Shown here: positions 4,526-39,500 of the stretch, piece by piece
Position numbering within the stretch: the first letter of the stretch is position 1
Layout of the letters: the number at the start of each line of letters is the position of its first letter
Origin: Mytilus californianus
Lineage: Eukaryota
Length of the DNA stretch: 64,000 nucleotides
NCBI RefSeq assembly: GCF_021869535.1
Contig: NW_026262712.1
Span: forward strand, 48,856,001 to 48,920,000
Direction: 5' to 3'
Translations under genes and position numbers: made by a program
The notes under the pieces: model-generated
The model's database searches: none
What the model was told of the DNA's origin: nothing
The model's input: the letters and a program-made list of their open reading frames with translations, nothing else

Positions 4526-4592
4526 ATGTTTCATTTGTTGTGTATCCTTTGCGTTACAATTGTATTGCTTTGCAAAGTTTCAGAAACTAAAG
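4526..4592 (+). CDS. Gene 1 exon 1, signal peptide
   Basis: MFHLLCILCVTIVLLCKVSETK, hydrophobic core, phase-1 donor AG|GTAGGA. Confidence 0.8.
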
Positions 4593-7500
4593 GTAGGATT
4601 TATACGTGTTTGTTTATCTTTTATTTATTCTACACTTCATGCTATTAAGTAAAGTTGATCGAAATCTTAATATTTGTATTTCGTTAATGACGAATAACAC
4701 TAAAATCACGATATTAAGAAAGCCTGTTTAAATATACTATTTGGTTAAAAAACTTATTTGATTTTACTTTACTCATATACTCTTTTTCATTATTTTTAAA
4801 AATGAATTAACTGTGACAGTCTTGCTTTGTTTTAGGAGAACCAACACGTGCATTTTTAACTAACAGTACCTTTAGTTGGTCTGATGCAATCGGCAAGTGT
4901 AGACTGATTCAAAATGAAACGACTATTCCTTATTCGCAATCCCCGACAGGACTGGGATGGACGAATATATCCGCAGAATATTTACCCTGGGTAGAGTATT
5001 TAGGTAAGAACATTCCGAGTATATGTTGTTAGATTGTTTGAAGTAGTACATGTATGTTTTAATCTGGACAGTATCATTTACTTGGGTGGTTGTTAATCGT
5101 TTTCTAAAACCATATGCCCTTACATTTAGTTACATCCGTAAATTCTTTCTCAAATTCAATGTGAATTTTGAAATGTTCTATCAGTAATCAACATCGATCA
5201 CCCTCATTTGTAAATTGTACAGAAACAAAATCTTTTAATATCCATTTTCGAAGTGTTACTAACCTATACTAAAATATTCAAGTGAATTAATGTTGCTTCA
5301 TATGTGTATTTATTGCTTATCAAATATGATAAAACCGCTAGAATGTTTTTAGTTGGACAAACGATCTCTCGTATGACCGACATTATTTAAATGACAGATT
5401 TTTTCAATATCTTTTCAATTGAACTATGTTACTGACTACCCCTATAAAGCTAACATTTGATTAGTTTGGATAGTTTGTCCTATTGGTTCAATGGTGGTTT
5501 TTTTTTCTAATTAATCTTTTTTGTATTTTTTTTGGTATTGTCCAACTGTAGTTGGGTTTTCAGCAATCTACTGTCGACTGATGATATAAAATTCTTACTT
5601 TTACAGTTTTAACTATGTACCTCTCCAAAAAAAACATGAAATGTAGGAATTGAACGTGTATATATGCGTATGTGTGTGTGTGTTCTCAGTAACGGTTGTT
5701 TTGGTTTTTTTTTTTTTTCAAAACCGGTTACTTATACTGTGAACGCACTATGTAGTGATCCGTTTTGAGTAAATACGATTCCCAAAGGTTTTTCTGTTGC
5801 CTTGAGTAGTCCGATTAATCGAAGTATGAAATTTAAATATCGGTACATTACTGTTGCCTACACTTATCGACAATGCAGATTATTACAGAAATTCAAATTT
5901 TGTTGTTGTCTCCTTGCCAGCCAGCCACCTTACAGTTCTCATTTCAATCTTATATTTGTATACATATATATTACAATATGTAATTTGGATTTGACTTTTT
6001 TATATTAAGTGATATTTAATCAATCGCGGTGGTGTTATGATTTTGTTCCCGCTGTATATGCATGATATTTGTTTAACATTTCTAAAACAAAAAATAAAAC
6101 AATGAAATGAAATGAAGAAGTATGTTTTTGCATTCTATCATTGCATGTAATTATATAATAAAACAAGATCTTCAATATAAAATATATCGACAGAATATTA
6201 GAAAGGAAAGAAGTATTCTCAACGCTATGGACAGTTCAAGATAATTGAATATCATATACATTAGGCATTAAGCTACAGTCTTTTGAACATGGATCCATTT
6301 TCAATTTCATTTGTTAAATTGAAACGTAATCTTATTGACAACCCTGGTTGAATAAATCATCACAATATACTTGTTTTCCTGAAGAAAGATTGGAAGTAAG
6401 AGGTACAGAAATCTGTTTAGTCAAATATCTATACGACCTGGTTAAATATTGTCTTAATGAGGATGTTTGTGGACTTTAAGCAACCAGCACAGAAACAGGG
6501 TATTTGAATCGTCATCTTTGTGTTAATACCAAAGGAGAGGCGTCAGTTTTGCTGTGAATTCCAAGTTTTTTTTAGTTAATCGTTCCAATTGTCTGCATAT
6601 AGGAACAATTTTGTGTGAAGCTTTGTCTTTTCGATTAATAAAATAAATGTCGTGAAGCGAAAATGAAGCATCTACTACTACTGGACTCCAGTTTTAGTGC
6701 ATCTGATTCAGGCTTGATCTATTCCGGAATAGTCCTCAATTGCATCCTCTAGTAACCTGGAGTACTATTTCAAGTTGATGGGCAGGGGAAATTGCTATTT
6801 AGGACTTAAACAATAGATGAAATAAACATCTACAGAGGTTAGTACTCATTATACGTATCACCGACAAAGTACAATAACGATAGCGTTTCATCATCGCAAA
6901 CATGCATCTCGATAGATTTAAAGTATTATATTTGAATTATCTATCAGCTGTAGTACGGTGGAACATAAGTCGTAAAAATAAAGATTAAGATAGCATTCCA
7001 CTATTAAATGTGTGATGTAAGTTCTATATACCCATCATGCCCATTAGTAATACGATGTAAAATGTCAGTCATAGAGTTGACACAAATCAAGACGTATTAT
7101 ATGTTTCTTATATTTCATTGGTGTAGTCGTCAACCACGAGCTCGATCGGAATATAATAGACTAAGGTTTAGAATGAGCATAATACTTCCCTACTTCAGTT
7201 CCATATATCATTGAATCATATTTGTATTGTTTATATACAGGGTGCTTCAAGATGTGGGAAGGAAAAGGCTTAAATGCCATACAAAAACATGTTACAGATG
7301 GTGAACAGCTTAAAGAATGTATTTTACGCTGCGAGGAGTATCAATTTCTTGGTTTGCAGGTAATAAGTAGTAGAGGAAGGTTCAAATATGTATGAGTGGA
7401 AGTTAAATCTTTATATTATTATTTTGCATATTCATAATAACTTACTTCGTTCAGAAAGAGTCACATGTTGAACTGGATTTTTAAGGGCAAAAAAACAACA

Positions 7501-10500
7501 GATAGAAAAGTGATATTGCACAGTAATAATAAAAATATAAAAAAATATATAAAAAAGCTCAATCCTTTGCTTTGCAATCGTACCAGCCAATAATTCATTT
7601 ATTCATTTCTTGTTTTGCTCTATTTTCAGTGTATTGATTGATTTTAGCCTTTGTATGTGGTCAATACATCCTCGTATAGACCTCATAAAAAGGCTACAGT
7701 TGTAAAATAATGCTTTTAATTTGTGATAATTTCACTGAAATGTAATTAAATTTTCGTATTACTTCAAAATTACGCTGATGTAGTAGGGAATTAAAAAGAG
7801 CAAGTTATAAGTACATATTTTGGCAGTAACATGACTCATGGGTGCTGTTTGATTTATAAATACAACTCCGTAAGAATACGAAATGTGAAAATTTACGATA
7901 ATCAATTATTCGGCCCTTAATAAGCTTAGGGCCGGATACAAAATTATACTGTTAGACAGTGGATATTAACATATGACAAAATCATTATAATTTATAGTAT
8001 TGTTATGTTTATAAACTTGTATTGAGCATAGACGAAAAACTGTCATTTCATGAATACTTTTCTAACATGCAAGCATGTGTATGTTAATGCTACTGATTAC
8101 ACCGCTAGACGAAATAGATAAAAAAAATGGTTTCCGCTTAGAATTTCTAAACAAATATATAACATTTAATATAAACATTTCCTGCTTATGTCTCAACTGG
8201 AACATTCTAAACGCAAGTGTTAAAAATATGATACATGTATACATTTCAGGCAAATTCATCGCAGTGTGAAGAATCTCAGCTGTTATTAACGAAACAAACG
8301 TTTTTTTTTTTTAGTTTTCAATAGAAGTGGCACTTTCGCTTTTCCGATGTTAAAAAAAGTTGTTCAGTAATAATACTTGATAATTCATTTATAACATGGA
8401 CAAAAAGTTTTTTTGATAATTTTTATGAACAGAAACAGTTCAGTATCGAAAAGCAATTGTAGATCTTGTAAACATTATGTAATATTTATCTTTATTTTTC
8501 TCAACACAACAACTCAAAGGATATGTCCGCGTCGTATCCTTATTTTAATGAGCTTAAGGGATCAACTCTCTTCAGATTATTTTCACACATTGACCTGCTG
8601 TATATTCATAGCGATACGGAAGGACCAACATTTCACCTATTAACATTGATGAACAAATGTGCATGCATTTTGTACCTCAGAGACAAGCTTGTAATCAGCG
8701 AAAAAAATTATCTTTTCTGATGTTTTTAATAATTCGTCAATGTGGAAAAATATTATATTTGTTTTATTCAGAGATCCATAATTGATGAAGCTAGCGTAAC
8801 GACAAATTAATGCGAACAGCGGTATTTTCTGTACCTACTGCAATTTTGGTTTAATGTACACTGTGATAATCACACATAGAAAAGGATAACAATTAATAAC
8901 ATATTATATATATTTGTTTATTTTCGTACATTATATTTATATTTGTAATAAATGTACCACATTTTCTGTTCTTGTAGAAATCGTTATGTATCTGCCTACG
9001 TAATTTCACACTAACAGAGGAATTTATTGAGACCCATTGTGATAGAAACGTGACAACATGTTCCGGGGATCGGTTTGCCTTTTGTGGAAAGGAAGACGGA
9101 AATGGTTACCTTTCTGTGTATAAAAAAGGTATTTCCCACATACACGTGTGTCCACATTAAATATTACAAATAAGTTGAAAAACAAATGATGGCTAGATTG
9201 TCAAGTTAGAGACAACCATCCATGACCATCCATATAATAGTTATAAGTTTAAGCTATATGTACAAGCAATTCATTTGATGCTTTCATTATCTGTTATACT
9301 CACACATTACAGCATGTTCTATGTTTTTGATATGTTATGCCCGTCCTCATTGATGGTATGTATACTTATACCATGTTTAGCATACAAAAAGGGATATTCT
9401 TTAAATTGTTTGATAGAATCAGTTCACCATGAGGTTAAAATAGAAAATATAAACATTATTAAAATGCCTTTGCAAATTGTAAACCATTGAGGCTTGAACG
9501 CATCTCCGCGAAATAATCATTTTTCAGCCTGATAAAAACACTAAAAACATCATATATTTTCTCAAAAACTAAAATAAGAACATTGTGCCGCGAAAGAAGT
9601 AAAGCAAATTATCTATAACAAAGATTGTGCAAGAAAACGATTTAATTTGGTGTGAATACAAATAAAATAGCACATTTGAAATGAAGTCCTCGTTTTCTTG
9701 TCATACAAAATATTGCTTTCAAATCTTATATTTACAACCGAAGTAAATGATGGATAAACATTATATATAAAATTACAATAAACAAACAACCGTATTGAAT
9801 TTCAATTAAATTTGTGACAAAAGTGCATTGCATATTTTTTCCAACAAACAAACGCACGTTCTATAAAACTAAGAAGGCTTCGCTATGTTAATTTTATACT
9901 AAGACATAAAGATCTTACTTATAGGAGTATTTCCTTGTTTAGATATCTCAGTTTTCATGTTTTGTAACATTTCCCCTAGTTAAGCCATTCACTTTCAAAG
10001 TAAACAGAGCTTGGCGCATTTTACGGCACCATGATTAAGTGCAGAAACTTCAAGGAAGGAATTACAGAAGTAAATGTAAGAGCAATTCGGAAAATTTGTT
10101 CTAAAAGTTACCGATTCATTTATCTAGTCCCAAAGGAGTGCCAGACAAATCAAGGTCAAAAGTCACGGTTTATGTCTTATTTCAATATGACTAAACGGCG
10201 ATGTTAGTAATACATCATGAGACAACATCCAAAACGACAAGATAACAAGCGTGATCTAGGTGTCACCAGGTTAGATTTTATCTGTTCTTATATATGCTAC
10301 AAATCATATAGTGAGACTTATCAGTGATTTTTAACGATGGTTTGCCATCCTAATTGATTTCTCTGGTGTTTGTATATTGATTAGCAATGTTAACACTTTC
10401 ATGCAGTTTTAGTGCCGTAGAACTGTGATCCGTTATAATTGAAGTGGAAACTCGTTGAAATCGGGAATATAAAGTTTAGCTCCACCATAGCTTATTTGTT

Positions 10501-13500
10501 CATATAATCGTAAGCTTGTTTTATTTGTATGTTCTTAAGTAAATGTTGATGATACATATGGTAACATTGGAAACTGCTTGTTTGTAAACACAAGTAATTC
10601 AAACGATTTCAAAGCCAAGGAATGCTCAACAAAATTCCATCACATATGTTTGAATTGTAAGTATATGTATACTGTAAGGCATCAGCTACTAGATATAATG
10701 TAAACATTTCTATGTCGATTTTGTGACTGTAGTTTACTATACATGTATATATGAGTAGAAAATATGATACACATCTATAGAACTCACGGCAGTAAAAAAT
10801 CTATACTTTCATCAGCAACCGTAAAACAAGTTGTTGGTTATAATATCAATCGGGTAAATGAAGTGTAACACGTGATAAAACGAGACAGTTTCTACACGTA
10901 AACAGTTTGTGAGTAACTCTTGAGTAAACGAAAATCATAACTAATAATTAGTAGGTCGACATAAATGTGGTAGACCTCACTTCGAGACCAACAAAGGAAC
11001 GAAATAGAAGTAGTAAGTCTTCCGCGAAACCAACAAACATGACCCATATAAAAATAGAAGACCTAACCAAAAGTGACTCATTTAATGCATAAAATACAAA
11101 ATTACCTCATTTTGAGATCTTACCACACCTACTACATTTCTTAAGGTTAATCTTGCTGGTTCAACGTCTATGAGGGACTAAAAAGGACGAAATTGTTTCC
11201 AAAATTTAATTTTACTGCTATAAATATATTTGTGTGTGACTACCTTAACATGCGGTGGGAAAGAGAGTGAGAGAAATGCTAATGAAATATGATACACAGA
11301 ATATAGATGATTATACTATTTACAAACATCATCCCGGAGCACCCCTGTGATTCCAGTATGATATGTACTTAACTACGTTTCCAACAACCCTATACAAATC
11401 AAGTATATAATACTGGTTACATTCTTCAATGAAGGTAAACGTAGACTAGTGAGATGAGAATTACTTTGTAACCGGAACGTTATATTAAAAAACAAGAAAA
11501 AAGCCAAGAAATTACAAGTTATTTATCATATATAACTGTTGCAATATATTTTGGCTTATCTATATTTAGTTTAGAAAGTTACAATTCCTTTACCGTTCAA
11601 AATTCGACAATTACCTTTGTGGCTTAGCATATTTTCCTAGTGATTTTATGGCACATGTTAAAGGAAAGATTAATTTGAAATCCATGACTGTAACATTATT
11701 TACCTTCAAAATCGAATTACTAGCATTACAGAAACGGGAAATGAAAAGTGGAGTTAAAAATATTCCCACTTGAAAATCAATTTCGTTTTGTCTAGACACA
11801 ACATGTACCCTATTTGTTACTGCACCTTATAGTTTGTCTGAATACCAGACAATTTCAATGTTATATATTAAGACTTTAAAAGAGAGACATAATAAAGATG
11901 TTCGAGGGATAATACTGTGAAAAATAATAATTTTAAAATGTAAACTGTTTCAGCTAATGAGACTGGATTCAATCTGCAAAGTACAACTAAGTCTAATTGG
12001 AAAGATGCCTTTGGTTACTGCAAAAACCTGGCAAGCTATAATTTAGTTAGAGGCAAAATAAATACAATAAACGTTTTAGAATCATTTTGGCTTTCTAATA
12101 CCAGACGATGGACAAGAAAAAGAGGTGAGTATATGTATATAAACTCATCATAGATACTAGGAACACAATTGTGTACGCCAGACGCGCAGTCTTTTGTATG
12201 GCAGTATTAAATTCTGTTTGATATCGCATATTGTCCTACCGAGCGTTTAAAAATACCATTGTTAGACCATTATCTGTTTCTATCGTTTGTTGTACTTTTT
12301 CCCCTTTGTTACCATATTAAAATTTAACAAGTTTCTAGATCTGTTCGTTGTAATTGTTTGGTTGTTCTTCCGATCAAGTCCACGTGGTTCTATAGGATAT
12401 CTGGCAATAAACTTTTAGTGCAATAAAAGCTAGTCCTACTATACCACCAGAAAGAGTTTACGGGAAGACAGTCTTCATATGTTGTAAATGAACATCCAAT
12501 TTGGATTTTTAACACGATATAATTCCATGTATTCAAACGTTTTAAATATCTAAAATTTAATTGTCGACAATGGAGAAATGTTTCCGTAGCGATTGTGTAG
12601 TTGATATTATATATCGTCCGGTTGAAGCTATATTTCAGGTGACCATTAACGGTCACTTAATTGATCTGCAAGAAAACTGTAACTTCCTTGTCATATTGAT
12701 AAAATGTCGAAACCGGAGAACTTCGAAGACTTAATGATGTCAAAATTAAATTTTCACAAAAGAAAACCAGAGACAAAGCCAACAACATTTGGATCAACCA
12801 GGATTGATTCATAGTATGCATAGATAGTGATGCAAGAGTCCTACATGGAACTGTAATATAATAAAATACATTTCAAAAATATAAGATAGATTTTTTGTAT
12901 CCATCTTAAATGAAAAATGAATGTCATTGCAACATATAACCTGTCGATATAACACGTAACCAGCTTTTTCTCGTAAATTAAGGCGACAGTATGTCAAACC
13001 AATGTTCAAATCCGGTAAATCGATTTAAAAGAGACAAATCAAGGTAACAAACAAAAACTGAGGAAGCCGCATGAACTCCAAAAGGAGCGAGACCGGTTGC
13101 ATCCACAGGGTAAGCATCTCCTGCTATGCATGTAACCCGTCATTAAAAAATCACATTCAATCAAAAATGTGCCAATAGGGAATACGGCACAATTGATAAA
13201 AATACAGATAAGACCATCACTCCGTTATTTAAAGATTTAAGAACTCTAAAACATGTCGCATGTGAGTAATTCGTATATGACAACTTCAGCAAAAAGGAGT
13301 TTGATAGTCCTGTCAAGGTAAATACCCAAACAGAATTTTAGAGAGTTTGGTTTTCTTTATGTGTGTGTGTGTTCAATTGATAGTAGGCATGACTGATGAT
13401 ATGATAGTCTTTTGTAAACCGTAACCGTTTCAAAATATTATACCAATGTGCAGTTAAAGATAACCGCCACACACAATAAAATGGATACTGAGCAAATGAC

Positions 13501-16500
13501 ATGTTTATAGGATATACACTTATTAAAGATCATTCTTTAAACCAGTTCAACATAATTGAATATTATAGAACAAATATATAATGATCCTTCCTAAACTTTG
13601 TTTTTTATTTTAAATTTCAACCAAACTTTGACTAAACGTGAAATAAACTTTACGAAAATTATTATAATATTCTTAACGTTTATCGATATGAAATTAAGAA
13701 GATTTGATATAACTGCCAATGAGACAACTATCCACCAGAGACCATAAGACGTCGATATAAGCAACCATAAGTCACAGTACGGCATTCATCAATGTGCAAT
13801 ATCCATACCGTGTAGTAGAGCTTTCTTACATTTTGACGAAAGGTACGAACGAAGGTAAAGGGAGCATGCATTTAATTTACATTCCCACGATAACACTTGG
13901 AAGTTGGATTCTACATTTTATCCGATAAAACGGTCTTCTATTCTTAATAACATGTATCTTTTTAAATTTCAGCATATCGCAGATAAACACGAATTTAATA
14001 TCTGTATTAAAATAAAGAAAAATCGTTTAAAATAGACTTACGTCCGATACGTTGATTATGTTATCCACAATTACACATATTTGCACGGGAATTGTTCAAG
14101 CATGCTTTTTTTAAATGTTAAAACAGAGACTTAAAATAAGACTCTTGTTTAAACCATTAACATCTTAATGAAATTCTTGCAGTATGATACTCTAAATTTA
14201 ATGACAGAATTCGTAATTATTTTTATTTTTTAACGAGTATGTCATCATCAAATTGTCAACGGGGATCATCAAGATTTGCCAGACAAAGAAACTACAATGT
14301 ATTGAAAAATGTACTTTAAAAAACCTGGTAGAAGGAAACATAAAAAAGGATGAAGTTTTTCCAATAATAAAAAGGTTAAATGATAAACAAAAAATATTGC
14401 GACACTTGCGATTATAATAAGCAAATGTTTAACGGAATAAAACCTATACCCCCCCCCCCCCCCCCACCCCCCCCCCCTCTGAAAATTAAATGATCGTTTG
14501 TATTCCCCAAATGATTTTTAGTCTGTTTAAAACTAGTTATATTTTCAGTTAATGCACGACTTATTCTATCTCATTCTTTTAAACGCCGTTAATTAGTTTA
14601 AAATCATTTATTACTTGTGGACCAAGCAGTGATGCACTTAACATTTACAGAAGATGTTAACACGAGCGAACATGTGAAATCCCATGCCAATTCCAGGGGA
14701 ATAATTAACACACACATACACCCTCACAAACAGCTTTGATTTAGACAATCATAGGATAAATATTTACGAGATGACAGCAAAACAGTCCAAACTGTATAAC
14801 AAACGTTTGGAGGTCCAAAAACCAAAAAGACAAACAATCAACAAATTGTACTGAAAAACCCGGAAAACTTAGGTGTCGCAGAAGTTTAAAACGTATCTGT
14901 CTCTGGCATAGTTGTGCATATAATAGACCAAGGCTAGGAGTATGTCTGCCGAGTGGATACAGATCGGGTGCTCCCACTCCTAAATCCGCCATCGAGCTCT
15001 AGTTACAGATCAAATAACTATGGATCTTGTTTTGTTCATTTACATACACAATTGAACAACTGGATGAGTAAAAGACCCCCAGTATATATTTTGAGTGTCA
15101 TTTTTTTCGATTTTACTATTTTGGGGGTTTCAAAATTTACAATTTAGAAAGATTATTTTTTTATTTTTATTTTTTTTTGGGGGGTGTAGTTGAGCACACC
15201 TTTTTTTACGGGATATTTTTCTTCTTCTGACGAGTCTGTGTTTAGCAAATTTTGTTAAGTTATCTCCTTCACCCTGTTTTTTTTATATATATTTTTACAT
15301 CGTACGTTCCTATGTTGCACGACTATCTTTTTGACACTTGTCGTAGCATGCAGTGTTTTAATCCTTGATTGGCAAATATTGAGGAGAAACGCAAATATTG
15401 AGGAGAAACGCAAACTTAGTCCCATGATCGCCTTGATTCAGATTACATAAATATGTTTAATTTTAAGAATAATTCAAAATAAAGGATCCCTCCACCATGT
15501 CTTACGTATGATTCGTCAAGCGTACGTATTTTTCGTCAAATTGTAAGAAAGCTCTAGTAAGTATTTAAGGACCCTCTAGTCCATTTTTATTCGGATTTTA
15601 CCTTTTCATCTTAATTTTTTTTTTTTAAATAATTGACTATATCTAGAAAACTCTTGTATAGTTTTAAATTCTTCGAGTCTATCCTCTCGTTTACACCATA
15701 TACTTATTATTGATGCAATATAATTCCACAACTATATTTGATTAGAATTCTTAGATGCAGCAGAATATCCTGAATTTTGTGTTGCTGCCAGAATAAGACA
15801 AAATGGTGATGTTAAAAGATCAATCCGTAGATGTAGAAAACGTCTACCCGGGCTTTGTATTGAAGTTGGAAAGACGGTTTCTGATATACCTTCAAAAATG
15901 TCTTCTACACTGTCACCAGTTAATACATTTTCTCGAAGATTGGATAAAACTTCTTCATTTCTACGAAGTAATACACTTCAAGGTATAACTATATCTACGT
16001 ACTCCGCTTCACAAAAAAGTACATTTTTATCTCAACTTGGATCAACATCTCCAGCTCTGAAGGAAACTACCGGTAGATCCAAAATGGTACCAAAAACAAC
16101 TTCTCCTTCTCGGGATATTCAGGAAAATACATTTCCAGTTCTTGTAGAATCTCCTTCTTCAGATGTACCGGGTAAAGATGAAATAGATGTTGTTTCAGGT
16201 AACGACCAACTAGCTATATATACGCTATATTTCTTTTAAGTGTTTCACTTTATATAATTCTTATAAGATTTGCATATTAGAGAATACGTTGATATGATTG
16301 GTTGAGAGGACTTCCGGTAGTTGTTCTTGTAAACAAGATGGCGGCGATAATAAAACAATCCGGATTGACGTTAACAAAATTTATTCAAAGTTCAATCTGC
16401 GTTAATAGTTAAATTAAATAGTAAACACAAACCATTCGTTTCAATGATAATAAGATTTTTTGTAGTTTATTTTTATCAGATTGCAAATTTCATGGAGTAC

Positions 16501-19500
16501 ATATTTTTGCGTTAACCAACAAATATATTCATGCGCCAGGCCTATTCAATGACACAAATATACAATTAACGTGTGATAGAGGTTACGAGTGTGAAAAAAA
16601 AAATTCTTTATCTCCAATTTTAAAGAATTATAAGGATTGAACGCCTTTTAAAAGGAATTTATTGGTGTATAAACTGTACCAAGTCACTCACAAACATATC
16701 ATAAAAGTCCTTCGGACTTTTATTTGTTTGTGAGTGAATTGGTCGAGTTTATACACCAATAAATTCCTTTAAAAAGGCGTTTAATCCTATAATAGCCCTT
16801 ACCTTCTAGATTTTTTAATCATAACTACAAGCAAAGACATGAATTATCAGTTTGTTTCGATAAAAACATATATAATACTATGAGTGAATAATTTTGTAAG
16901 CAATAACAATAATTAATGATTGACTTGTGTGATGTATTATAGTCAAACGGTTTAGATTGGTAGAATTGAGTTTTATAGAAAATTATGGCTTGAAATCTAG
17001 TAAAAATATGTCCTGCCTTTGTAATATTTAAAGAACTTGTAAATAAAAACCGTTTAAATGAATTATTTTAAAAATGATCAAAGAGTTATTTGAAATAAAG
17101 TACTTTTTTTAACAGAAATAGTCATCATAGCAATAGTAGCTGCAACAATCCTCATAGTCATCGTTATATCAGTAACGGTTGTCTTCTGTAAAAGGTAAGT
17201 CATCGTTATATGAGAAACGAATGTATTTTGTAAAAGATAAGTCATCGTTATATCAGTAACGATTGTCTTGTGTAAAAGGTAAGTCATCGTTATATTAGTA
17301 ACGATTGTCTTCTGTAAAAGATAAGTCATCGTTATATTAGAAACGGTTGTCTTCTTTAAAAGGTAAATCATCGTAATATTAGTAACGATTGTCTTTTGTA
17401 AAAGATAAGTCTTCGTTATATTAGAAACGATTGTCTTCTGTAAAAGGTAAGTCGTCTTTATATTAGACCTTTTCAATAACTCTCGACACCGACTAATGAC
17501 ATCTACAGTTTACAGGTAAAATGAAGGGGTCGTCTCAAAACTAAAAATCATTCATGAATAGTATTACTTTTACACCTTCGATTTATCGTTTTACACTATT
17601 TGGACGAAAGAACATATTTCTAACAAATAAGAACTATTATATCTCTCTCTTTTGTTTAGCATTCTTATTACATGTAGTTATACGACATTTTACGTTGAAT
17701 TTATTAAACCTTCAAGTAAATAATTACTGCAATCAATTCACATAATCTGCCTTTTTTTCTTCTTAAATTTCATGATTATGTGAGTATTTTGATAAGCGAG
17801 TCTGTCAACGCAGATATTTCCACATGCCAATTGCGATTAATTCGCTTTTGTAATGCTATTTATGAAATTTGCTGAAGGAACATTGTAACAGGACTACCGT
17901 CCGTCCGCTCGAGTTGTGTTTCTCAACCGATCTTCACGTCACTTGTTGTACACATTCAATTTTGGGAGGGGTAAAAGCCTATTTGTTTAAAGGTCAAAGG
18001 AAAAGGCCACATCGATAATTTAGTTACGCGAGACTACTCCGCTTTAAGATACCATGTTAAAATTGAGATGTTTCCTTAATGAACTGGAAACATTAACGGC
18101 ACCTTTTTTTTCTGCGCCACATGCGCATTTTTACAATTAATATCTCTTCAGTGATGCGTATGGTATTTATATCCCAACAGAGCTTGTTGTCATTGCAGTG
18201 TCTTTTTGACAGCGCCGAACTGATTGACCGTTATAGGTTGTCCGTGTCCCGAAAGACGTGAACATACCTTTTCCCCTGTCGTAGATTCCTTTCATTTCCT
18301 TTCCCTGTTCCTGAAAAATGACCTTCGTGTGTCTTGCAAGAAGCGAAGAACTGCTTACCCTTCCCCTTTTCAGGACATAGCTTTGGTTTTCTACTCTTTA
18401 CTGTTTTTTTTCATGCATAAAGGTTTTTTAAATTTCATCACTGACCATACATAGGGGAGATTTAAGATCCCAATTATACTAGTGAAACCCGGCCGCATGT
18501 TTTATGCGCCTGAAACAATTCCTAAACAAGTTGGTCATTGCAATTGGTAAGTTTTTGTCACAATAGAATATTTAGTTTACAATTTGATATTTTGACATTA
18601 TGCTTCGCTCTCATATTTGTTTCCTTTTTATTCGATCAAAGATAGTAACTTTGTTTCCTTTTTTTTGGAAATGGGTTGAGATTCGGGTCTTTAACCAAAA
18701 TGCAGACTATGCGGTAACTGAATGTCTGTTTTATATGTTGCATTGTGTGGTTTTTTTCCTACTGCAGAAGTCATAAAAATGACAAGAGAACGAGAAAAAA
18801 AAGCTTACGATTTGAATCTAAATCTGAATCAGAAGAGACACCAAGGGCCTTTAAAAATCTTGGTATCTATTTTGTTATGAGTACCACTGAGACATTGGAA
18901 GCCAAAATTAACAGACATTGTAGAAACATGTACCGCCCTAGTCAACAGATATAAAACATTGATTAATTAAACATCTACTACAAAAATACAGGTATTTTTT
19001 TTTTTTTTTTTTTCATTTTTCAACTCGACGTCTAAAAGAAATGAAACATTGAAGTCCTTCCTTTTCTTCATAGTCAATTCACAAATAAATTTCGTTTTGA
19101 TAAACAAATACCTAATAAACAAAATAAGGTACGGCACACAACAATTGCTTATCTACACGTCATGTTGGATAGTGGTCTCATTGGCAATCAAAATAATCAT
19201 ATGCGATCAATTATAATTTTTTTCAATTTTATTTATGAGACGACCCCTCATATCTCACCTGTCGTAGTCGTTCTCAACTGTAGGTGTAGACAATTGTTGA
19301 AAAGGTCTATTAGTAACGATTGTCTTTTGTAAAAGATAAGTCTTCGTTATATTAGAAACGATTGTCTTCTGTAAAATGTATAGTAATTTTACTGTATCAT
19401 GTTTATATATATACAAAATGTATGTACTAGACGTGATAGGAATGTCAATACGATTTTGACGCTGATGTTAACTACCAATACCACTACACGCTATAGTGGG

Positions 19501-22500: not shown

Positions 22501-23198
22501 TTTTAAATATGCTGCAAAAATAAAAACCAAGCAAATATGAAAAAAATAAGAAACTGCATCCCTCAGAATTTTATTCTTCAATTACGTGGTTTACAACTTT
22601 CCCGTACGGGTAATTTGTTTTCAAAATTCAGTGAACTATCTTATGTTATAGGCGTTAAATATGATTTATTTTTCCTTAAATTTCAAATGGAATATGTGGT
22701 GGACATGTCAGTTCCTTATTTCAATGTTTGCAATTTTTCAGTATTTTTTCTTAATATGAAGCGACAGAAAAATATAAACAAATTTACCGGTATAACCCCT
22801 TCTGTACCATTCATCATTTGCCCCTTTATATCATTCTTCATAAATTGTGCATACGACTATCGTCTAATAAAATCTTCAAATTTTTCATTTTATTTTACAG
22901 AAAGAGAAATACACAAGGTACGCCACTAAACCAACCAATGGTTATTCTCGGAAGAGAAGCTGTCTATGGAGAAGCCAACACGCCGCCCGCTCAACATGCA
23001 GGAAGCACAAGTCAGAGATTTCACCCAACTGCATCTGACGATACATACGACCACATTGATCATTGTCGACCTAATCAGACCCACAATCCGACAGAAAGCA
23101 ACTACGACACCATGCGTAGTACTGGGACCCGAAGTGAAAAGAGAAATGAGTTAAACTATGATCATGTGACTGGAACAAAGAAGGGATGTAATATTTGA
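4526..23198 (+). CDS. Gene 1: spliced 9-exon type I membrane receptor (SP - split CTLD/WSC - CTLD - Ser/Thr stalk - TM - Tyr-rich tail), about 537 aa
   Basis: Exons 4526-4592, 4836-5003, 7241-7359, 8978-9128, 10540-10656, 11954-12124, 15755-16198, 17116-17194, 22901-23198. All introns are GT-AG with compatible phases (1,1,0,1,1,1,1,2). The sum is 1614 nt = 538 codons, with no internal stop in my hand translation. The structure is mirrored exon for exon by gene 2. Confidence 0.88.
4836..5003 (+). CDS. Gene 1 exon 2, N-half of CTLD1 and entry to the WSC domain
   Basis: GEPTRAFLTNSTFSWSDAIGKC...GLGWTNISAEYLPWVEYL; TTTAG acceptor, G|GTAAG donor; 168 nt, same length as gene 2 exon 2. Confidence 0.9.
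7241..7359 (+). CDS. Gene 1 exon 3, WSC domain first part
   Basis: GCFKMWEG...LKECILRCEEYQFLGLQ; YLGCF and C-x3-C...FLGLQ match the WSC pattern; TACAG acceptor, CAG|GTAATA donor. Confidence 0.9.
8978..9128 (+). CDS. Gene 1 exon 4, WSC domain second part
   Basis: KSLCICLRNF...HCDRNVTTCSGDRFAFCGKEDGNGYLSVYKK; C-x-C, three more Cys and a CG...SVY ending typical of WSC. Confidence 0.9.
10540..10656 (+). CDS. Gene 1 exon 5, C-half of CTLD1
   Basis: VNVDDTYGNIGNCLFVNTSNSNDFKAKECSTKFHHICLN; C...C-x7-C ending of a CTLD; donor T|GTAAGT. Confidence 0.85.
11954..12124 (+). CDS. Gene 1 exon 6, N-half of CTLD2
   Basis: NETGFNLQSTTKSNWKDAFGYCKNL...ESFWLSNTRRWTRKR; TTTCAG acceptor, G|GTGAGT donor. Confidence 0.88.
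12790..13130 (-). mobile_element. Probable Penelope-like retroelement fragment
   Basis: AATCCGGTAAAT...GGGTAAGCATCTCCTGC is the reverse complement of the tail seen at 57030-57110. Confidence 0.45.
13700..13815 (-). mobile_element. Family A tail
   Basis: TGCCAATGAGACAACTATCCACCAGAGACC...GTACGGC. Confidence 0.65.
14450..14478. repeat. Poly-C tract (G-run on the minus strand), probably within a MITE end
   Basis: About 28 C with one A interruption, followed by TCTGAAAATTAAATGATCGTT, resembling the 55311 MITE end. Confidence 0.8.
15755..16198 (+). CDS. Gene 1 exon 7, C-half of CTLD2 plus Ser/Thr-rich stalk
   Basis: DAAEYPEFCVAARI...RSIRRCRKRLPGLC then MSSTLSPVNTF...DVVS (covers ORF 15898-16239); an alternative phase-1 donor follows 16171. 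Confidence 0.85.
16240..16793. mobile_element. Hairpin-ended repeat element in gene 1 intron 7
   Basis: Imperfect palindrome 16627-16793 with apex GTCC-TTC-GGAC; the opposite end has a CCAATCA..AACGTATT motif like the element at 51700-52070. Confidence 0.5.
17116..17194 (+). CDS. Gene 1 exon 8, transmembrane helix
   Basis: EIVIIAIVAATILIVIVISVTVVFCKR; AACAG acceptor after a T-tract, AG|GTAAGT phase-2 donor. Confidence 0.88.
17157..17465 (+). repeat. 42-bp minisatellite derived from the TM exon 3' end plus its donor (units 1-7 and part of 8)
   Basis: Units start at 17157, 17199, 17241, 17283, 17325, 17367, 17409, 17451; consensus GTCATCGTTATATTAGTAACGATTGTCTTCTGTAAAAG(G/A)TAA. Confidence 0.95.
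17466..19307. mobile_element. About 1.84-kb non-autonomous TIR element inserted into minisatellite unit 8
   Basis: Ends GACCTTTTCAA...TTGAAAAGGTC, a second inverted motif AGGGGTCGTCTCA, flanking TATTA duplication; the array resumes exactly after it. Confidence 0.85.
18115..18440. mobile_element. Degenerate hammerhead motif (minus strand) next to a Penelope-like tail, inside the TIR element
   Basis: Minus strand GCATCA-CTGAAGA-GATA.TTAAT.TGTA-AAAA-TGCGCATG-TGGCGC; plus strand AACTGCTTACCCTTCC...GGTTTTCTA resembles 57085-57170. Confidence 0.45.
19308..19381 (+). repeat. Continuation of the 42-bp minisatellite (rest of unit 8, unit 9)
   Basis: TATTAGTAACGATTGTCTTTTGTAAAAGATAA GTCTTCGTTATATTAGAAACGATTGTCTTCTGTAAAA. 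Confidence 0.92.
19870..20042 (+). mobile_element. Family A tail
   Basis: TGTCGGGCCTTT...TCTATAGTTG...CATTTGGTCTCTGGTAGATAGTTGTC...GGCAATCATACCGCATCTCC. Confidence 0.6.
20410..20490 (+). mobile_element. 3' fragment of a tRNA-derived SINE
   Basis: GGCTTCCTCCACCAACAAAAC...CCACGA...ATATTGTTGAAAGTGGCG, homologous to 22300-22380. Confidence 0.6.
21015..21125 (-). mobile_element. Family A tail
   Basis: AGATATAGGAAGATGTGGTATGAGTGCCAATGAGACAAC...GGTCAAGGTACGGCCTTCAACACGGAGC. Confidence 0.8.
22143..22390 (+). mobile_element. Near full-length tRNA-derived SINE
   Basis: GGGGCCTCGTTGGCCGATTGG (A box), GTAAGTTTGAACCC (B box), core GGTTCTTTCTGGGCACCTCGGTTTCTTCCAC, (CAAT)n tail. Confidence 0.75.
22901..23198 (+). 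CDS. Gene 1 exon 9, cytoplasmic tail with repeated Tyr motifs
   Basis: RKRNTQG...AVYGEA...DTYDHI...SNYDTM...LNYDHVTGTKKGCNI*; TTTTACAG phase-2 acceptor; AATAAA at 23254. Confidence 0.87.
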
Positions 23199-24109
23199 TA
23201 GTGCTACAGATTACAGCCAGGTTGACACCACGAAGTTAAAGACATATTATTGGAATAAATGATATATTTTTGTTTTATTTTTACAAGTTTCTACTCATTT
23301 AATTCAACGGGGAAATGGGTAAACGTCAATCAGAAAGCCACACAGTAATACCACAGAATCAAAATGTATATATTGATTGATGGTTGTTGGCTTGATGTCC
23401 ACTTACTACGTCATGCATATTCTGGAAGGGAACAATTAATAACAATCCAGTTTGTAGGGTTCTTCACGGTGGTTTGAACGATATAAGAGGCGAAAAAGAG
23501 GCTATGTTGTTTTGAAGCAAACACATTTTCTTGAAACAGATCCACCGTAGAATTGTATCAAGTTAAAACGTGTGGAAACCCTGGTACTCTAAAAAAAAAA
23601 GCATCATAGATGAACGAACGAAGGTTAGTACTACATACAACCTTCAAAGACAAACACAGTTTTTTAACGTCTACACATTCCAGAGACCTGTATATTGCAA
23701 CGTGATTTCATATAAGATGAAAGGACTTCACTATAACTGACAAGAAGGTAGATTACTAGGGGCGTAACAATCCCACTCAAAACATTAATGACCACAAAGC
23801 CCCTTAGCCCCTTGAATTCGAAAATCATCTGCGAGAAATTTATTAAAAAATCTATCAAATAACACCATCCAGATATTCATAAGTCTGTCCGAAATAAATA
23901 TATTTATTTTTTATTAGTGTCTAACGAAAGTGTTTCAGAACTTCAAACTTTTGAATAATTTGAACAATATGCCAAATAGTCTCATTAAAGATATAGAAAA
24001 ACTATATGCCTAAATTTTTCTGATAAAGGCGTCAATTTGAACATCATTAATACCTCATAGCGACATGGGGTTCATAATTGTTTAGAAAAACGTAGCAATA
24101 GTGTACACG

Positions 24110-36009: not shown

Positions 36010-36070
36010 ATGAACATGATTCTAAATCTTTTGATAATTTGTTTCTGTATAAATGTATTTTGTTCTAAAG
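36010..36070 (+). CDS. Gene 2 exon 1 (coding part), signal peptide
   Basis: MNMILNLLIICFCINVFCSK; AG|GTAAGT phase-1 donor; CTGCAG just before the ATG suggests an upstream non-coding exon. Confidence 0.75.
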
Positions 36071-36507
36071 GTAAGTTACATTGTTATCTCTTTTTAATCA
36101 TATTCAAAGTAATTTATTTCGCGAAATCTATCGTTAGAATTCATTTCATTTATCATATTCAACATGTATAGCAATAAGTCGAAGAAAAGAGAAACATAAG
36201 CCAAGATTGGCAAACAAGGTATTCGAATTAAAAGAGATAAGAATGATACACAAGAGACATAAATGTCAGAACTAATGAAACCCTGTAAATTCATAACAAT
36301 AATTAATAGAAGAATGAATTATTTCTCAAATTATTGAGTCTGCGCAACAACAACTACATGTTTCATAATAATTCATGTTTACTAAATATTGTGACCTCAC
36401 AGCTGTACAGTTGTGTTATTTCTATAAATGCTGTATTTTTCTGTATACATATCTTTGTATCAGCATAGGTTTTATCAGAAAAAAACCAACATAAATATGA
36501 TATTAAC

Positions 36508-36538
<31 letters not shown>

Positions 36539-39500
36539 TAGTCTAAATTGAAAACATATATATATATTAGTCTAAATTGAAAACAACGTTCAAACGTATG
36601 ATTGCGTTGGATAAAAACCGCAATTTTTATACGTGTGCATGCAAAACAAATTTCTTGGTAAAGGGGTCTAAATACACCACAAACAACATATATATATATA
36701 TATGTATATGTCACTTAATATATGTTTATAATATTTTTAAATCTTTTGATTTCGTGTTTAAATTTTAAGAAAATCAAGATCATCTTTTGTAGTAAAGAAG
36801 ATAAAGTCAATGAAATAATGAAGTTTTCAGCATAGATGTGAAATAAAAATCCCAGGAAGAAGAGTATACCGGGCTACAATTACAATATTTCGTGTTAACA
36901 TAAAGATCACATATCACAAGAATTAGAAATAAGTGAATGACTAAGTTCCGATGTATTTGCAATAATCGAAAGTATGTACTAAAGAAAAATTCGGTAAACA
37001 CTTGAAACATGTAAAATACACTTATGACTTCTAGTACCGACAACGAAAATCATTGCGTTGTAAGTTCAAATGTTTGAAATGCTCCGCTTATCTCTGAAAA
37101 TATTGTTATCGTGTAAATTGTTTGATTTTTTTTTTTTTTTTACTTTTCCTGCTCACGCAATCTTTCGTCTGCCAAGAATTTTTAAAAATAAATGTACTTA
37201 TGATGATTCAGGTTTGAAACTTTTTTAACATTTATAAATTTATGTTACCGTAAACTTACACTTTCATTTGACGTTTTAACAGTATTCTTAATGAAGGCCT
37301 AAAATACCATAATGAATACTTGACATTCACGTATCACTGGGTTTTTTTTCTCTCTTGAAGTTCGTACGCATGTCATTGTGTTCGATATGATAAATTTATG
37401 TAATGTTTCTAATAGGTGTACAAATCACAGGACTATTTCTCTATATAAGACCAAATTTGGATATTTTAAGATTTCGTAGAGAAAAATTAAAAAAAAATTT
37501 TGAAATTCGGACACTAGCTTTACGCAAATATAAGAAAGACTGTGTAAGGTCAACGTATTTTGTGGAAATTATAAAAAAAATCTAATGCCATTTACAGGAG
37601 AAGTAGCCAACGCATTCTTGACTAGAAACAACTATACATGGACAGAAGCCAAAAACAACTGCACTATGATTAGACAAGAGAACTTCGTAAACATATCAAA
37701 CAGCATTGATCGACAATTGTGGATAGATGCTAGAGTAACTTATTCGCCCTGGATAGAATATTTAGGTATAATTGAATGTTTTTTTTATCATATACTATAG
37801 GTAATTTATTATTGGTGTCAGATAGTATATATCTATTACATTTAAGCATAACTTTTTCACAGCACTACATGTATTTGATAACACACCGTAACAAAACATC
37901 ATTTACAAAAAGTTATAAAACAAAGACAATGTAAGCACAACTAGTTACACCTTTCTTCACTTAAAACATCATATTGTCTTGTTATTGATGTTCCACACAT
38001 ATCGCATCTGTATCAACCCGTGACAAAAATATAAACTCGAAGAGCTCTGCTCGAGGGATTGTATTGGTTGAGGTTTAATTTTGTTACGATGTATGATTTT
38101 TAAATTTTATCATATAACTCAAGTGTTTTCACTTGACGTGACGTACTGCAGAATATGTTTGATAAAACTATTGCAATCATGATTGATATCGATGACATGA
38201 CGTCATACAGATTAGGAGTTTGATAAAACCTTAGAAACTGTGACTGATATCGATATATTGAGGGGTGGCTGATACAGCACGGTTGCCATTGATTGTATAA
38301 CACATACAATTTACTTGTATTTACTACTATAACAATATACAAATGTATCAGGACCCTTGCTGGAAGCATTTAGCGGCGAATGAAAACGTCACACCATAGA
38401 GAATTAGGGCCAAGGCTGCCCTATTGTCGGCGTTAATTAAGTTTCTAAAATCCGTAAAAAAAAGATTAGCTTGCAAAAAAATGTAATATTTAAAAGTTTT
38501 CATAATAAAAATATATGTTATTTTGAAACAACATTTCATATTATTTTTATATTAGGGTGTTCAGAGTAACAGATGAAATTGTAGGAACTCATCAATACGT
38601 TACATCGGGACAACAGATAGAAGAATGTTTGCATATTTGTACCGATTATGATTTTCTCGGTCTTCAGGTAAATGCTTCGTCATGTTGCAGCCTTTTATGC
38701 TTTGAAACTTTTTCAAAGATACTGCGTTCATCTAAAGCAAAACCGCACGTGGCAGGTGCGCTCGCCTCCAATCTTAACTGACTAGGAATATCCTTTTTCC
38801 TTCCCAGGCGGAAACCTAGTTGAAATTAAACAAAAGAAATGGAACTCTTTGTTAGAGAAGGAAAAAAAAGCAAAATTGATATATTTGAATTGTTTACATC
38901 TGTTTCTATGGGCTTTCAAAGTTTAATAAAGATGCATAATTTAGGATTTTATGCATCTTATATACGTGTTTTTACTTGAATTATAGTATGGAGCTTCGAG
39001 ATATTTGTAAACTTTTGAATTGTAGACAAATTTTCATAAAACAGTCGATGTGAAAGGTTCAAATCCAAGTGGATCTTTTTTGTGTATAAGCATAAATTCC
39101 GTCGAAAAAAATTCCACAGAAAGATAATAGATCGATCTTTCTAAAGCATTAATTTGCATCTCTGCCCCCGGCGACAGTTTGTTAGGAAAAAATATAAAAA
39201 ATGATCAATAATTGAATCGAAAAGAGAAATTCGAGTGCACCTTTTTAAGTTCGGGTGTGTTTGAGTTCACTATTCTTTCTTGAAAACGTAGAAAGCAAAA
39301 ATATTTGAAATATCATCTCGCTTCAGATTCTATTATTTTTATATATTTAGGCTACAGGTTGATTTAATAACATTAAAAATTCACAGTACTAAAAAATGAA
39401 ATATATGGGTCAAGTGAAATACCTTTCTAATGAGTCATTACAACAGAGTAGGTGTGTTCGAATAACAAATTTTTACAAAAAGTACTTGACGATAGACTTT

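What the first reader, a model, noticed from the sequence alone, without database searches (positions are those of the whole stretch)
4836..10656. WSC domain appears inserted inside a C-type lectin fold (discontinuous CTLD)
Seen: exon 2 gives the CTLD N-half (SWSDAIGKC helix 1, GLGW/QLWI strand). Exons 3-4 give a complete 8-Cys WSC domain. Exon 5 gives the CTLD C-half (GNCL...ECSTKFHHIC / GNCL...PCDQYFHLVC). Both genes share this order. Known: CTLDs have an outer and an inner disulphide, and the long loop after the WIG strand carries the sugar site. Inference: the WSC domain replaces the long loop, grafting a different binding module onto a lectin scaffold. Neither CTLD shows EPN/QPD or WND motifs, so classic Ca2+-dependent sugar binding is unlikely.
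Basis: partly seen in the sequence, partly recalled or inferred. Interest (0 to 1): 0.75.

Follow-up and report, generated by a model that had tools for sequence, protein, structure and literature searches.

The report
WSC domain nested in lectin-like module
A mussel-specific membrane receptor gene carries a genuine WSC sugar-binding domain, encoded by a two-exon cassette, between the two halves of a small four-cysteine module that looks like a C-type lectin fold, but that lectin identity is only weakly supported.

Summary
Gene 1 (+ strand, 4526-23198) has the exon order signal peptide, N-flank (1 Cys), WSC (2 exons, 8 Cys), C-flank (3 Cys). RNA contigs from a close relative confirm splice joints 1>2, 2>3 and 3>4.

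The middle domain is a true WSC:
- Pfam scores 33 bits (cut-off 27.8) on the closest homologue.

The two WSC exons form a symmetric phase 1-1 cassette. A second module directly downstream has the same 1-Cys exon plus 3-Cys exon layout and the same intron phase, but no insert. This points to exon shuffling into a split module.

The C-type lectin domain (CTLD) identity of the flanks is only suggested:
- In favour: the W..A...C, GLGW/LWID, GNCL and C-x7-C patterns, cysteine parity, language-model neighbours carrying Lectin_C, and ESMFold neighbours L-selectin and CD94 spanning both flanks.
- Against: Pfam Lectin_C and PDB profile searches found nothing, and AF2 left the flanks below pLDDT 50.

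Gene 2 has the same order, but its WSC Cys1 codon is frameshifted. One RNA contig joins an exon-1-like sequence directly to exon 5.

The family is found only in Mytilus among the proteins retrieved. I rate it a new variant of a known kind, of moderate interest.

The parts
4526..4592 (+). Gene 1 exon 1: signal peptide, ends in phase 1
   Evidence: ATG, hydrophobic 22 aa and GT donor. An RNA contig joins its 3' end to 4836.
4836..5003 (+). Gene 1 exon 2: N-flank (CTLD-like N-half), 56 aa, 1 Cys, motifs W..A...C and GLGW; phase 1-1
   Evidence: Ten relatives, those with a source name all Mytilus, were found in 1.84 billion representatives.
7241..7359 (+). Gene 1 exon 3: first half of the WSC domain (Cys 1-3)
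   Evidence: Joint 5003>7241 in an RNA contig. Alignment to WSC-positive homologues.
8978..9128 (+). Gene 1 exon 4: second half of the WSC domain (Cys 4-8). Exons 3+4 total 270 nt, a symmetric phase 1-1 cassette
   Evidence: Joint 7359>8978 in an RNA contig. Fold matches to the WSC domains of Wsc1, Kremen and glyoxal oxidase on the homologue model.
10540..10656 (+). Gene 1 exon 5: C-flank (CTLD-like C-half), 40 aa, 3 Cys, GNCL ... C-x7-C; phase 1-1
   Evidence: RNA contigs cover it and continue into an exon-6-like sequence. One contig has exon-1-like sequence directly upstream.
11954..12124 (+). Gene 1 exon 6: N-half of a second, uninterrupted module (1 Cys, NWKDAFGYC, FWLSNTRRW); phase 1-1
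15746..16198 (+). Gene 1 exon 7: C-half of the second module (3 Cys, EFCVAA ... C-x7-C), then a Ser/Thr-rich stalk
17116..17194 (+). Gene 1 exon 8: transmembrane helix
   Evidence: It is followed by a 42-bp minisatellite at 17156-17467.
22901..23198 (+). Gene 1 last exon: cytoplasmic tail with YDHI, YDTM and LNYDHV motifs
   Evidence: tblastn of homologue tails and translation.
36010..42942 (+). Gene 2, exons 1-5 in the same order: 36010-36070, 37598-37765, 38556 or 38573-38667, 41310-41457, 42814-42942. WSC Cys1 is disrupted

Best explanation
Gene 1 encodes a type I membrane receptor of a family found only in Mytilus among the proteins retrieved. Its parts, in order, are a signal peptide, a composite distal module, a second small four-Cys module, a mucin-like stalk, a transmembrane helix, and a tail with tyrosine motifs.

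In the distal module a complete WSC domain (shown) is encoded by a two-exon, phase 1-1 cassette. The cassette lies in the intron that splits a four-Cys module into a 1-Cys N-half exon and a 3-Cys C-half exon. The next module in the same protein has the same split without the cassette. The WSC was therefore most likely placed there by exon shuffling (inferred).

In known WSC structures the first and last strands are neighbours and all eight Cys pair internally. The domain can therefore bulge out of a loop while the two flanks close around its base through a Cys(exon 2)-Cys(exon 5) bond (inferred).

The flanks most likely form a compact CTLD-like scaffold without a Ca2+ site, and the WSC sits where the long loop would be. 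I give about 0.7 that the flanks form one disulphide-linked unit and about 0.6 that this unit is a CTLD fold.

Ligand binding would then fall to the WSC surface, and signalling to the YxxI/YxxM/LxYxxV motifs in the tail (inferred).
For: **Gene model and splicing**
- Joints 1>2, 2>3, 3>4 and 5>6 are seen in RNA contigs.

**WSC identity**
- Pfam WSC scores 33 bits against a cut-off of 27.8 (E 7e-8, profile 1-81/82) on P0003:414-507. That protein is the closest relative of gene 1, at 54% identity. Four of 7 members match.
- The WSC topology is b1-b5-b3-b4-b2 with four internal disulphides (PMC9024836).

**Flanks belong together**
- Cys counts are 1 / 8 / 3 in gene 1 and in the four homologues that carry all three parts of module 1, and 1 / 3 in module 2.
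- Cognate halves of modules 1 and 2 align at matching positions (P 0.04 and 0.017). Non-cognate halves give 0.38 and 0.23.

**CTLD likeness**
- The nearest named ESM-Atlas clusters by features carry Lectin_C for module 2, for the short-insert variant P0008, and for P0005 with WSC clusters skipped.
- The Atlas's own model of P0005 has L-selectin (114 aligned, residues 1-211) and CD94 (TM 0.48 by target, residues 3-211) among its 30 nearest structures.
- UniRef names P0018 (module 2 plus stalk, TM and tail) 'C-type lectin domain-containing'.
- C3-x7-C4 spacing and W..A...C are visible in the sequence.
Against: **Sequence searches**
- Pfam Lectin_C never matched any flank, module 2, or the natural short-insert protein.
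- Profiles A1 and A2 found no CTLD among PDB sequences.
- A full-length hhalign of excised module 1 against module 2 is not significant.

**Structure and language-model evidence**
- AF2 left the flanks at pLDDT below 50 and module 2 at 39.5. Fold searches on these parts returned nothing meaningful.
- Language-model scores are 0.80-0.89, which is 'lead only'. TM scores are below 0.5.
- The alpha2 region of module 1 is about 10 residues too short for a canonical CTLD.

**Transcripts and gene models**
- One RNA contig joins an exon-1-like sequence straight to exon 5. In run X2, exon 5 is covered but exons 2-4 are not.
- Several annotated homologues lack one half (P0004, P0016, P0019).

**Limitation**
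- The window's own spliced protein could not be handed to the tools, so all fold evidence comes from homologues 47-54% identical.
Confidence: 0.6

Rival explanations
1. The flanks do form one disulphide-linked unit around the WSC, but it is a lineage-specific cysteine clasp or extension and not a CTLD. The lectin-like motifs would be a superficial resemblance.
For: No HMM or profile similarity to any CTLD. AF2 does not fold the flanks. The alpha2 region is missing. Language-model and TM scores are below the tools' own trust thresholds.
Against: Three separate queries all point to Lectin_C and to no other family. The ESMFold neighbours L-selectin and CD94 span both flanks. The 1+3 Cys pattern, C-x7-C spacing and W..A...C are those of CTLDs. 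UniRef labels module 2 a C-type lectin domain. HMMER negatives are weak here, because the WSC hit also vanishes when the flanks are attached (against 67).
Confidence: 0.25
2. The exons are independent beads used combinatorially. The N-flank, WSC and C-flank would be separate mini-modules, shuffled by alternative splicing or by exon loss among paralogues, so there is no discontinuous domain.
For: All exons are phase 1-1. One contig joins an exon-1-like sequence to exon 5, and in X2 exon 5 is covered without exons 2-4. Some gene models lack exon 5 (P0004, P0016), most of the WSC (P0008) or exon 6 (P0019).
Against: The odd Cys counts (1 and 3) make each flank unstable alone. The exon 1>5 contig differs from the window in exon 1, and its exon 6 start matches only 25 of 30 bases, so it may come from a paralogue. 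The truncated models may be annotation errors. Order and Cys counts are conserved in gene 1 and the four homologues carrying all three parts.
Confidence: 0.12
3. This is a gene-model artefact: the exons belong to different genes or to a pseudogene, and no such protein is made.
For: The only RNA run of the window's own species label that was laid (X9) gave 0 reads, with about 6% of the run read. Gene 2 has a frameshift in exon 3. Gene 1's tail is frameshifted relative to homologues.
Against: Spliced contigs confirm joints 1>2, 2>3 and 3>4 in a 95-99% identical relative. The same order appears in annotated proteins of five Mytilus species. The gene 1 reading frame is open through all exons.
Confidence: 0.03

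Closest known systems
WSC domains of Kremen1/2, yeast Wsc1 and fungal glyoxal oxidase (PF01822; PDB 5fws, 7pz2, 9n3u)
   Different: In those proteins the WSC stands in tandem with other domains (Kringle-WSC-CUB) or alone on a stalk. Here it is flanked on both sides by halves of another small module. Sequence identity is only 16-21%.
Polycystin-1 (PKD1) ectodomain (domain order from my own knowledge)
   Same: One metazoan membrane protein carrying both a WSC domain and a C-type lectin domain.
   Different: The two domains are separate and in series, not nested. The protein is a very large, multi-pass membrane protein.
Bivalve-specific CTLD-containing proteins with added WSC domains (Saco et al. 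2023, PMC10140915)
   Same: Mussel-restricted, uncharacterised receptors that combine CTL and WSC domains. This family is probably among them.
   Different: In the passages I read, the paper lists the domain combination only. It does not describe a WSC inside a CTLD. The CTLD that databases detect is most likely the second, uninterrupted module.
Compact, non-Ca2+ CTLDs such as the Link module and NK-receptor-type CTLDs like CD94 (from my own knowledge; CD94 also)
   Same: Four-Cys core, no EPN/QPD/WND motifs, and a short or absent long loop. CD94 is a structural neighbour of the ESMFold model.
   Different: Those are contiguous domains recognised by Lectin_C or Xlink HMMs. NK receptors are type II membrane proteins, whereas this one is type I.

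Membership tests
WSC domain (PF01822) | Profile HMM match above the curated cut-off | tested here: met
   P0003:414-507, the closest homologue (54% identical to gene 1), scores 33 bits against a cut-off of 27.8, E 7e-8, profile 1-81/82. Four of 7 members match. The window's own exons scanned singly gave nothing. The spliced window protein has no reference and was not scanned.
WSC domain (PF01822) | Eight conserved cysteines | tested here: met
   Gene 1 exons 3+4 give 90 aa with 8 Cys, as do four homologues. Gene 2 has 7 at best.
WSC domain (PF01822) | PAN/apple-like fold, b1-b2-a1-b3-b4-long loop-b5 | tested here: met
C-type lectin-like domain (PF00059 / CTLD fold) | Profile HMM match to Lectin_C | tested here: not met
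   No hit at E up to 10 on flanks, whole proteins, module 2 alone, or the short-insert variant. PDB profile searches were empty.
C-type lectin-like domain (PF00059 / CTLD fold) | Four core cysteines: C1 in helix 1, C2 at strand 3, C3 and C4 seven residues apart at the end | tested here: met
   The pattern 1 Cys (W..A...C) plus 3 Cys (GNC ... C-x7-C) occurs in module 1, and the same in module 2. It is conserved across the complete family members. This shows the pattern only; the pairing itself is not shown.
C-type lectin-like domain (PF00059 / CTLD fold) | Double-loop alpha/beta fold with N and C strands paired | tested here: inconclusive
   AF2 left the flanks at pLDDT below 50. The Atlas's ESMFold model of P0005 (pLDDT 0.61) has L-selectin and CD94 among its 30 nearest, spanning residues 1/3-211, with TM 0.42 by query and 0.48 by target.
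C-type lectin-like domain (PF00059 / CTLD fold) | WIGL-type strand 2 motif and both helices | tested here: inconclusive
   GLGWT (gene 1), QLWIDA (gene 2) and FWLSN (module 2) lie at the expected place. The segment between C1 and this motif in module 1 is only about 19 residues, and no helix 2 is predicted.
Classical Ca2+-dependent C-type lectin | EPN/QPD and WND sugar/Ca2+ motifs in the long loop and strand 4 | tested here: not met
   None of EPN, QPD, WND, EPS, EPD or QPN occurs in gene 1.
Nested (discontinuous) domain architecture | Both flanks and the insert lie in one mRNA | tested here: inconclusive
   Joints 1>2, 2>3 and 3>4 are seen. Joint 4>5 is not seen. One contig joins exon-1-like sequence to exon 5. 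Annotated homologues have the full order.
Nested (discontinuous) domain architecture | The flanks form one structural unit (a C1-C4 bond across the insert) | not testable with these tools
The unit is inferred from Cys parity and the internal pairing of WSC Cys (PMC9024836).

The most novel reading that the evidence does not exclude
This would be a true domain-in-domain protein. A CTLD scaffold would have had its ligand-binding long loop replaced, through exon shuffling of a symmetric phase 1-1 cassette, by a whole WSC domain. A sister module in the same protein preserves the pre-insertion state. I know of no other natural CTLD that serves as a scaffold for a foreign binding domain.
Probability: 0.5. 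Interest if true: 0.65.

Novelty: new variant of a known kind. Interest (0 to 1): 0.48.

Why it matters
CTLDs and WSC domains are both common binding modules, and they are normally strung in series. A WSC grafted into the CTLD loop that usually makes the sugar site would be a clear natural example of loop replacement by a whole domain. The gene also preserves the exon-shuffling route: a phase 1-1 cassette, and an uninterrupted sister module next to it.

It would also show that the large mussel lectin repertoire diversifies by nesting domains as well as by duplication and tandem fusion. Current annotation would miss such a domain, because the split halves escape the HMMs used here and no source name or precomputed Pfam hit records a CTLD there.

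If the flanks turn out not to be a CTLD, what remains is an ordinary lineage-specific WSC receptor family.

Tried and rejected
**Searches that found nothing useful**
- Pfam on single exon translations gave nothing, because the pieces are too short.
- Pfam on whole homologues and on module-only pieces never gave Lectin_C. The WSC hit is also lost when the flanks are attached, so these negatives are weak.
- Profile searches of PDB sequences with A1 and A2 gave nothing or noise.
- A word search with profile A2 at E up to 10 returned only family fragments and no canonical CTLD to bridge to. Without a reference set of canonical CTLD sequences I could not run a profile-profile test against CTLDs.
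- Full-length hhalign of WSC-excised module 1 against module 2 was not significant. Half-by-half comparison gave only weak colinear matches.

**Models that did not help**
- The AF2 model of module 2 had pLDDT 39.5, and its fold searches were meaningless.
- An Atlas fold search with my AF2 model found only WSC neighbours.

**Other**
- The exon 2 hits to bacterial TraN proteins (P0007, P0011) are chance matches between Cys-rich sequences.
- The RNA run of the window's own species label gave no reads.
Homologues stood in for it.
Full report
**1. What is in the sequence**

The window is AT-rich (32.5% GC) and has no N. On the + strand a spliced gene starts at 4526. All exon borders are GT..AG.

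| Exon | Coordinates | Content | Phase |
|---|---|---|---|
| 1 | 4526-4592 | signal peptide | ends in 1 |
| 2 | 4836-5003 | 56 aa, 1 Cys, SWSDAIGKC and GLGW | 1-1 |
| 3 | 7241-7359 | with exon 4: 270 nt, 90 aa, 8 Cys | cassette 1-1 |
| 4 | 8978-9128 | see exon 3 | cassette 1-1 |
| 5 | 10540-10656 | 40 aa, 3 Cys, GNCL ... ECSTKFHHIC | 1-1 |
| 6 | 11954-12124 | 57 aa, 1 Cys, NWKDAFGYC ... FWLSNTRRW | 1-1 |
| 7 | 15746-16198 | 3 Cys, EFCVAA ... C-x7-C, then Ser/Thr-rich stalk | starts in 1 |
| 8 | 17116-17194 | transmembrane helix | |
| last | 22901-23198 | tail with DDTYDHI, SNYDTM and LNYDHV | |

**2. Is it transcribed as read?**

Only Logan contigs of a 95-99% identical organism were informative. 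They show:
- exon 1 sequence joined to 4836;
- joint 5003>7241;
- joint 7359>8978;
- exon 5 continuing into an exon-6-like sequence.

The exon 4>5 joint was not covered.

One 891-nt contig places exon-1-like sequence directly before exon 5. That exon 1 portion has one mismatch to the window. In run X2, exon 5 is covered at depth about 16 while exons 2-4 are not covered at all. The exon 6 start in these contigs matches the window at only 25 of 30 bases. They may therefore come from a paralogue, and I cannot tell.

The RNA run of the window's own species label gave no reads, with about 6% of the run read.

**3. Relatives**

A full HMMER scan of 1.84 billion representatives with exon 2 found 12 hits. 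Ten are family members and two are bacterial TraN proteins matched by chance.

A word search with P0002 returned only Mytilus proteins, from M. trossulus, M. californianus, M. edulis, M. galloprovincialis and M. coruscus. NCBI calls them uncharacterised. UniRef calls them 'WSC domain-containing'.

The window's own protein is not in the collection. The closest is P0003:341-545, at 54% identity. For that reason, and because a spliced protein has no reference, every family scan, fold and Atlas test was run on homologues. This is a real limitation.

The family alignment shows the same order in P0002, P0003, P0005, P0013 and P0014: N-flank, WSC, C-flank, then the second module.

**4. The middle domain is a WSC domain**

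- Cut out alone, P0003:414-507 scores 33 bits on Pfam WSC (cut-off 27.8, E 7e-8, profile 1-81 of 82). Four of 7 members match.
- An AF2 model of P0003:359-549 has a core at pLDDT 68-87 (residues 53-116 and 139-151) with the element order b-b-a-b-b-loop-b.

|---|---|---|---|
| 9n3u | glyoxal oxidase | 7.7 | 91 |
| 5fws | Kremen | 7.6 | 83 |
| 9vfr | Kremen | 7.5 | 82 |
| 7pz2 | yeast Wsc1 | 7.4 | 88 |

- Foldseek ranks Wsc1 first, with probability 0.99.
- The Atlas search agrees.

**5. Do the flanks belong together?**

The Wsc1 structure paper (PMC9024836) reports sheet order b1-b5-b3-b4-b2 and four disulphides that use all eight Cys. The first and last strands are therefore neighbours, which suits insertion into a loop, and no WSC Cys is left over.

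The flanks hold 1 and 3 Cys in gene 1 and in P0003, P0002, P0005 and P0013. An odd count on each side means the exon 2 Cys must bond to an exon 5 Cys or stay free. This is an inference, not a measurement.

The second module has the same layout: a 1-Cys exon, a phase 1 intron, then a 3-Cys exon, with no insert. Cognate halves of the two modules align weakly but at matching positions: W..A...C with P 0.04, and C-x7-C with P 0.017. Non-cognate pairs give 0.38 and 0.23. A full-length comparison is not significant.

Together with the symmetric 1-1 cassette, this fits exon shuffling of a WSC into the intron of one copy of a duplicated module.

**6. Are the flanks a CTLD?**

Evidence for:
- The pattern y.(t/s)n...sW..A...C, then GLGW / LWIDA / FWLSN, then GNC[LV], then C-x7-C. 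These spacings are those of CTLD C1, WIGL, C2 and C3-C4 (from my own knowledge of the fold).
- The nearest named ESM-Atlas clusters by features carry Lectin_C for module 2 (0.86), for the natural short-insert variant P0008:27-151 (0.88-0.89), and for P0005 with WSC clusters skipped (0.80).
- The Atlas's own ESMFold model of P0005 (pLDDT 0.61) has WSC clusters on residues about 70-172. It also has L-selectin (114 aligned, residues 1-211, TM 0.42 by query) and CD94 (104 aligned, residues 3-211, TM 0.48 by target) among its 30 nearest.
- UniRef names P0018 'C-type lectin domain-containing'. P0018 consists of module 2, stalk, TM and tail.

Evidence against:
- Pfam Lectin_C gave no hit in five scans.
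- No CTLD appeared in PDB profile searches.
- AF2 left the flanks below pLDDT 50 and module 2 at 39.5, so fold searches on those parts were uninformative.
- All language-model scores are below the tool's 0.9 trust line.
- In module 1 the segment where helix 2 should be is about 10 residues short.

The HMMER negatives carry limited weight, because the clear WSC hit also disappears when the flanks are attached.

My estimates are 0.7 that the flanks form one unit and 0.6 that the unit is a CTLD-like fold.

**7. Gene 2 and neighbours**

Gene 2 has the same order: exon 1 at 36010-36070, then 37598-37765, 38556-38667, 41310-41457 and 42814-42942. Its exon 3 is 112 nt against 119 nt in gene 1. With the homologous acceptor the frame reads GCSE and then a stop. 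An acceptor at 38573 keeps the frame but drops WSC Cys1. Gene 2 is therefore either a pseudogene or a 7-Cys variant.

A module-2 C-half of gene 2 lies near 52099-52218. A third family gene starts at 62420.

**8. Likely working**

- Shown: a WSC domain in a secreted or membrane context, a stalk, a TM helix, and a tyrosine-rich tail.
- Inferred: the WSC is held on a small lectin-like scaffold lacking any Ca2+/sugar motif (no EPN, QPD or WND). Recognition would rest on the WSC surface. The tail's YxxI, YxxM and LxYxxV motifs would recruit SH2 proteins.
- Context: a Mytilus-restricted gene family with at least three gene starts in 64 kb. This fits the lineage-specific lectin-receptor families described for bivalves (PMC10140915), a paper that mentions unique CTL+WSC architectures but, in the passages I read, not a nested one.

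**9. Verdict**

- The WSC is confirmed.
- The nested position is confirmed at the level of gene and protein sequence.
- CTLD identity of the flanks is plausible but unproven.
- I rate this a new variant of a known kind, of moderate interest.

Noticed in passing
window 17156-17467: A 42-bp minisatellite (7.4 copies, 87% match) repeats the 3' end of the TM exon together with its GT donor.
   Followed up: partly
window 38556-38667: Gene 2 exon 3 is 7 nt shorter than gene 1 exon 3. With the homologous acceptor it gives an in-frame stop (GCSE*). An acceptor at 38573 restores the frame but removes WSC Cys1.
   Followed up: yes
window 23150-23260: Gene 1's tail ends at ...VTGTKKGCNI. The homologues' last ~25 residues (..FVVD..SNYSHVEV..) are recognisable in another frame just downstream. 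This means either a frameshift or a truncated tail variant.
   Followed up: partly
window 10537-10656 (RNA contigs of a related organism): An 891-nt contig joins exon-1-like sequence directly to exon 5 and runs on into an exon-6-like sequence. In run X2, exon 5 has depth about 16 while exons 2-4 have none. This is either an isoform or a paralogue without the N-flank and WSC.
   Followed up: partly
window 6808-6837 and 9980-10007: A 58-nt contig shows a GT..AG joint from about 6837 to about 9980, inside introns 2 and 4 of gene 1. Further contigs lie on intronic stretches 6465-6837, 9358-9517 and 10072-10247. These could be another transcript, retained introns or repeats.
   Followed up: no
window 62420-62533: Start of a third family gene. 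Its signal peptide exon is 58% identical to P0008 residues 1-38. The window ends before the rest of the gene.
   Followed up: no
homologues P0003:414-507 and P0003:359-549: Pfam WSC scores 33 bits on the excised domain. It is not reported at all when the 55- and 40-residue flanks are attached, or on the whole protein. Family scans on this family depend strongly on how the query is cut.
   Followed up: yes
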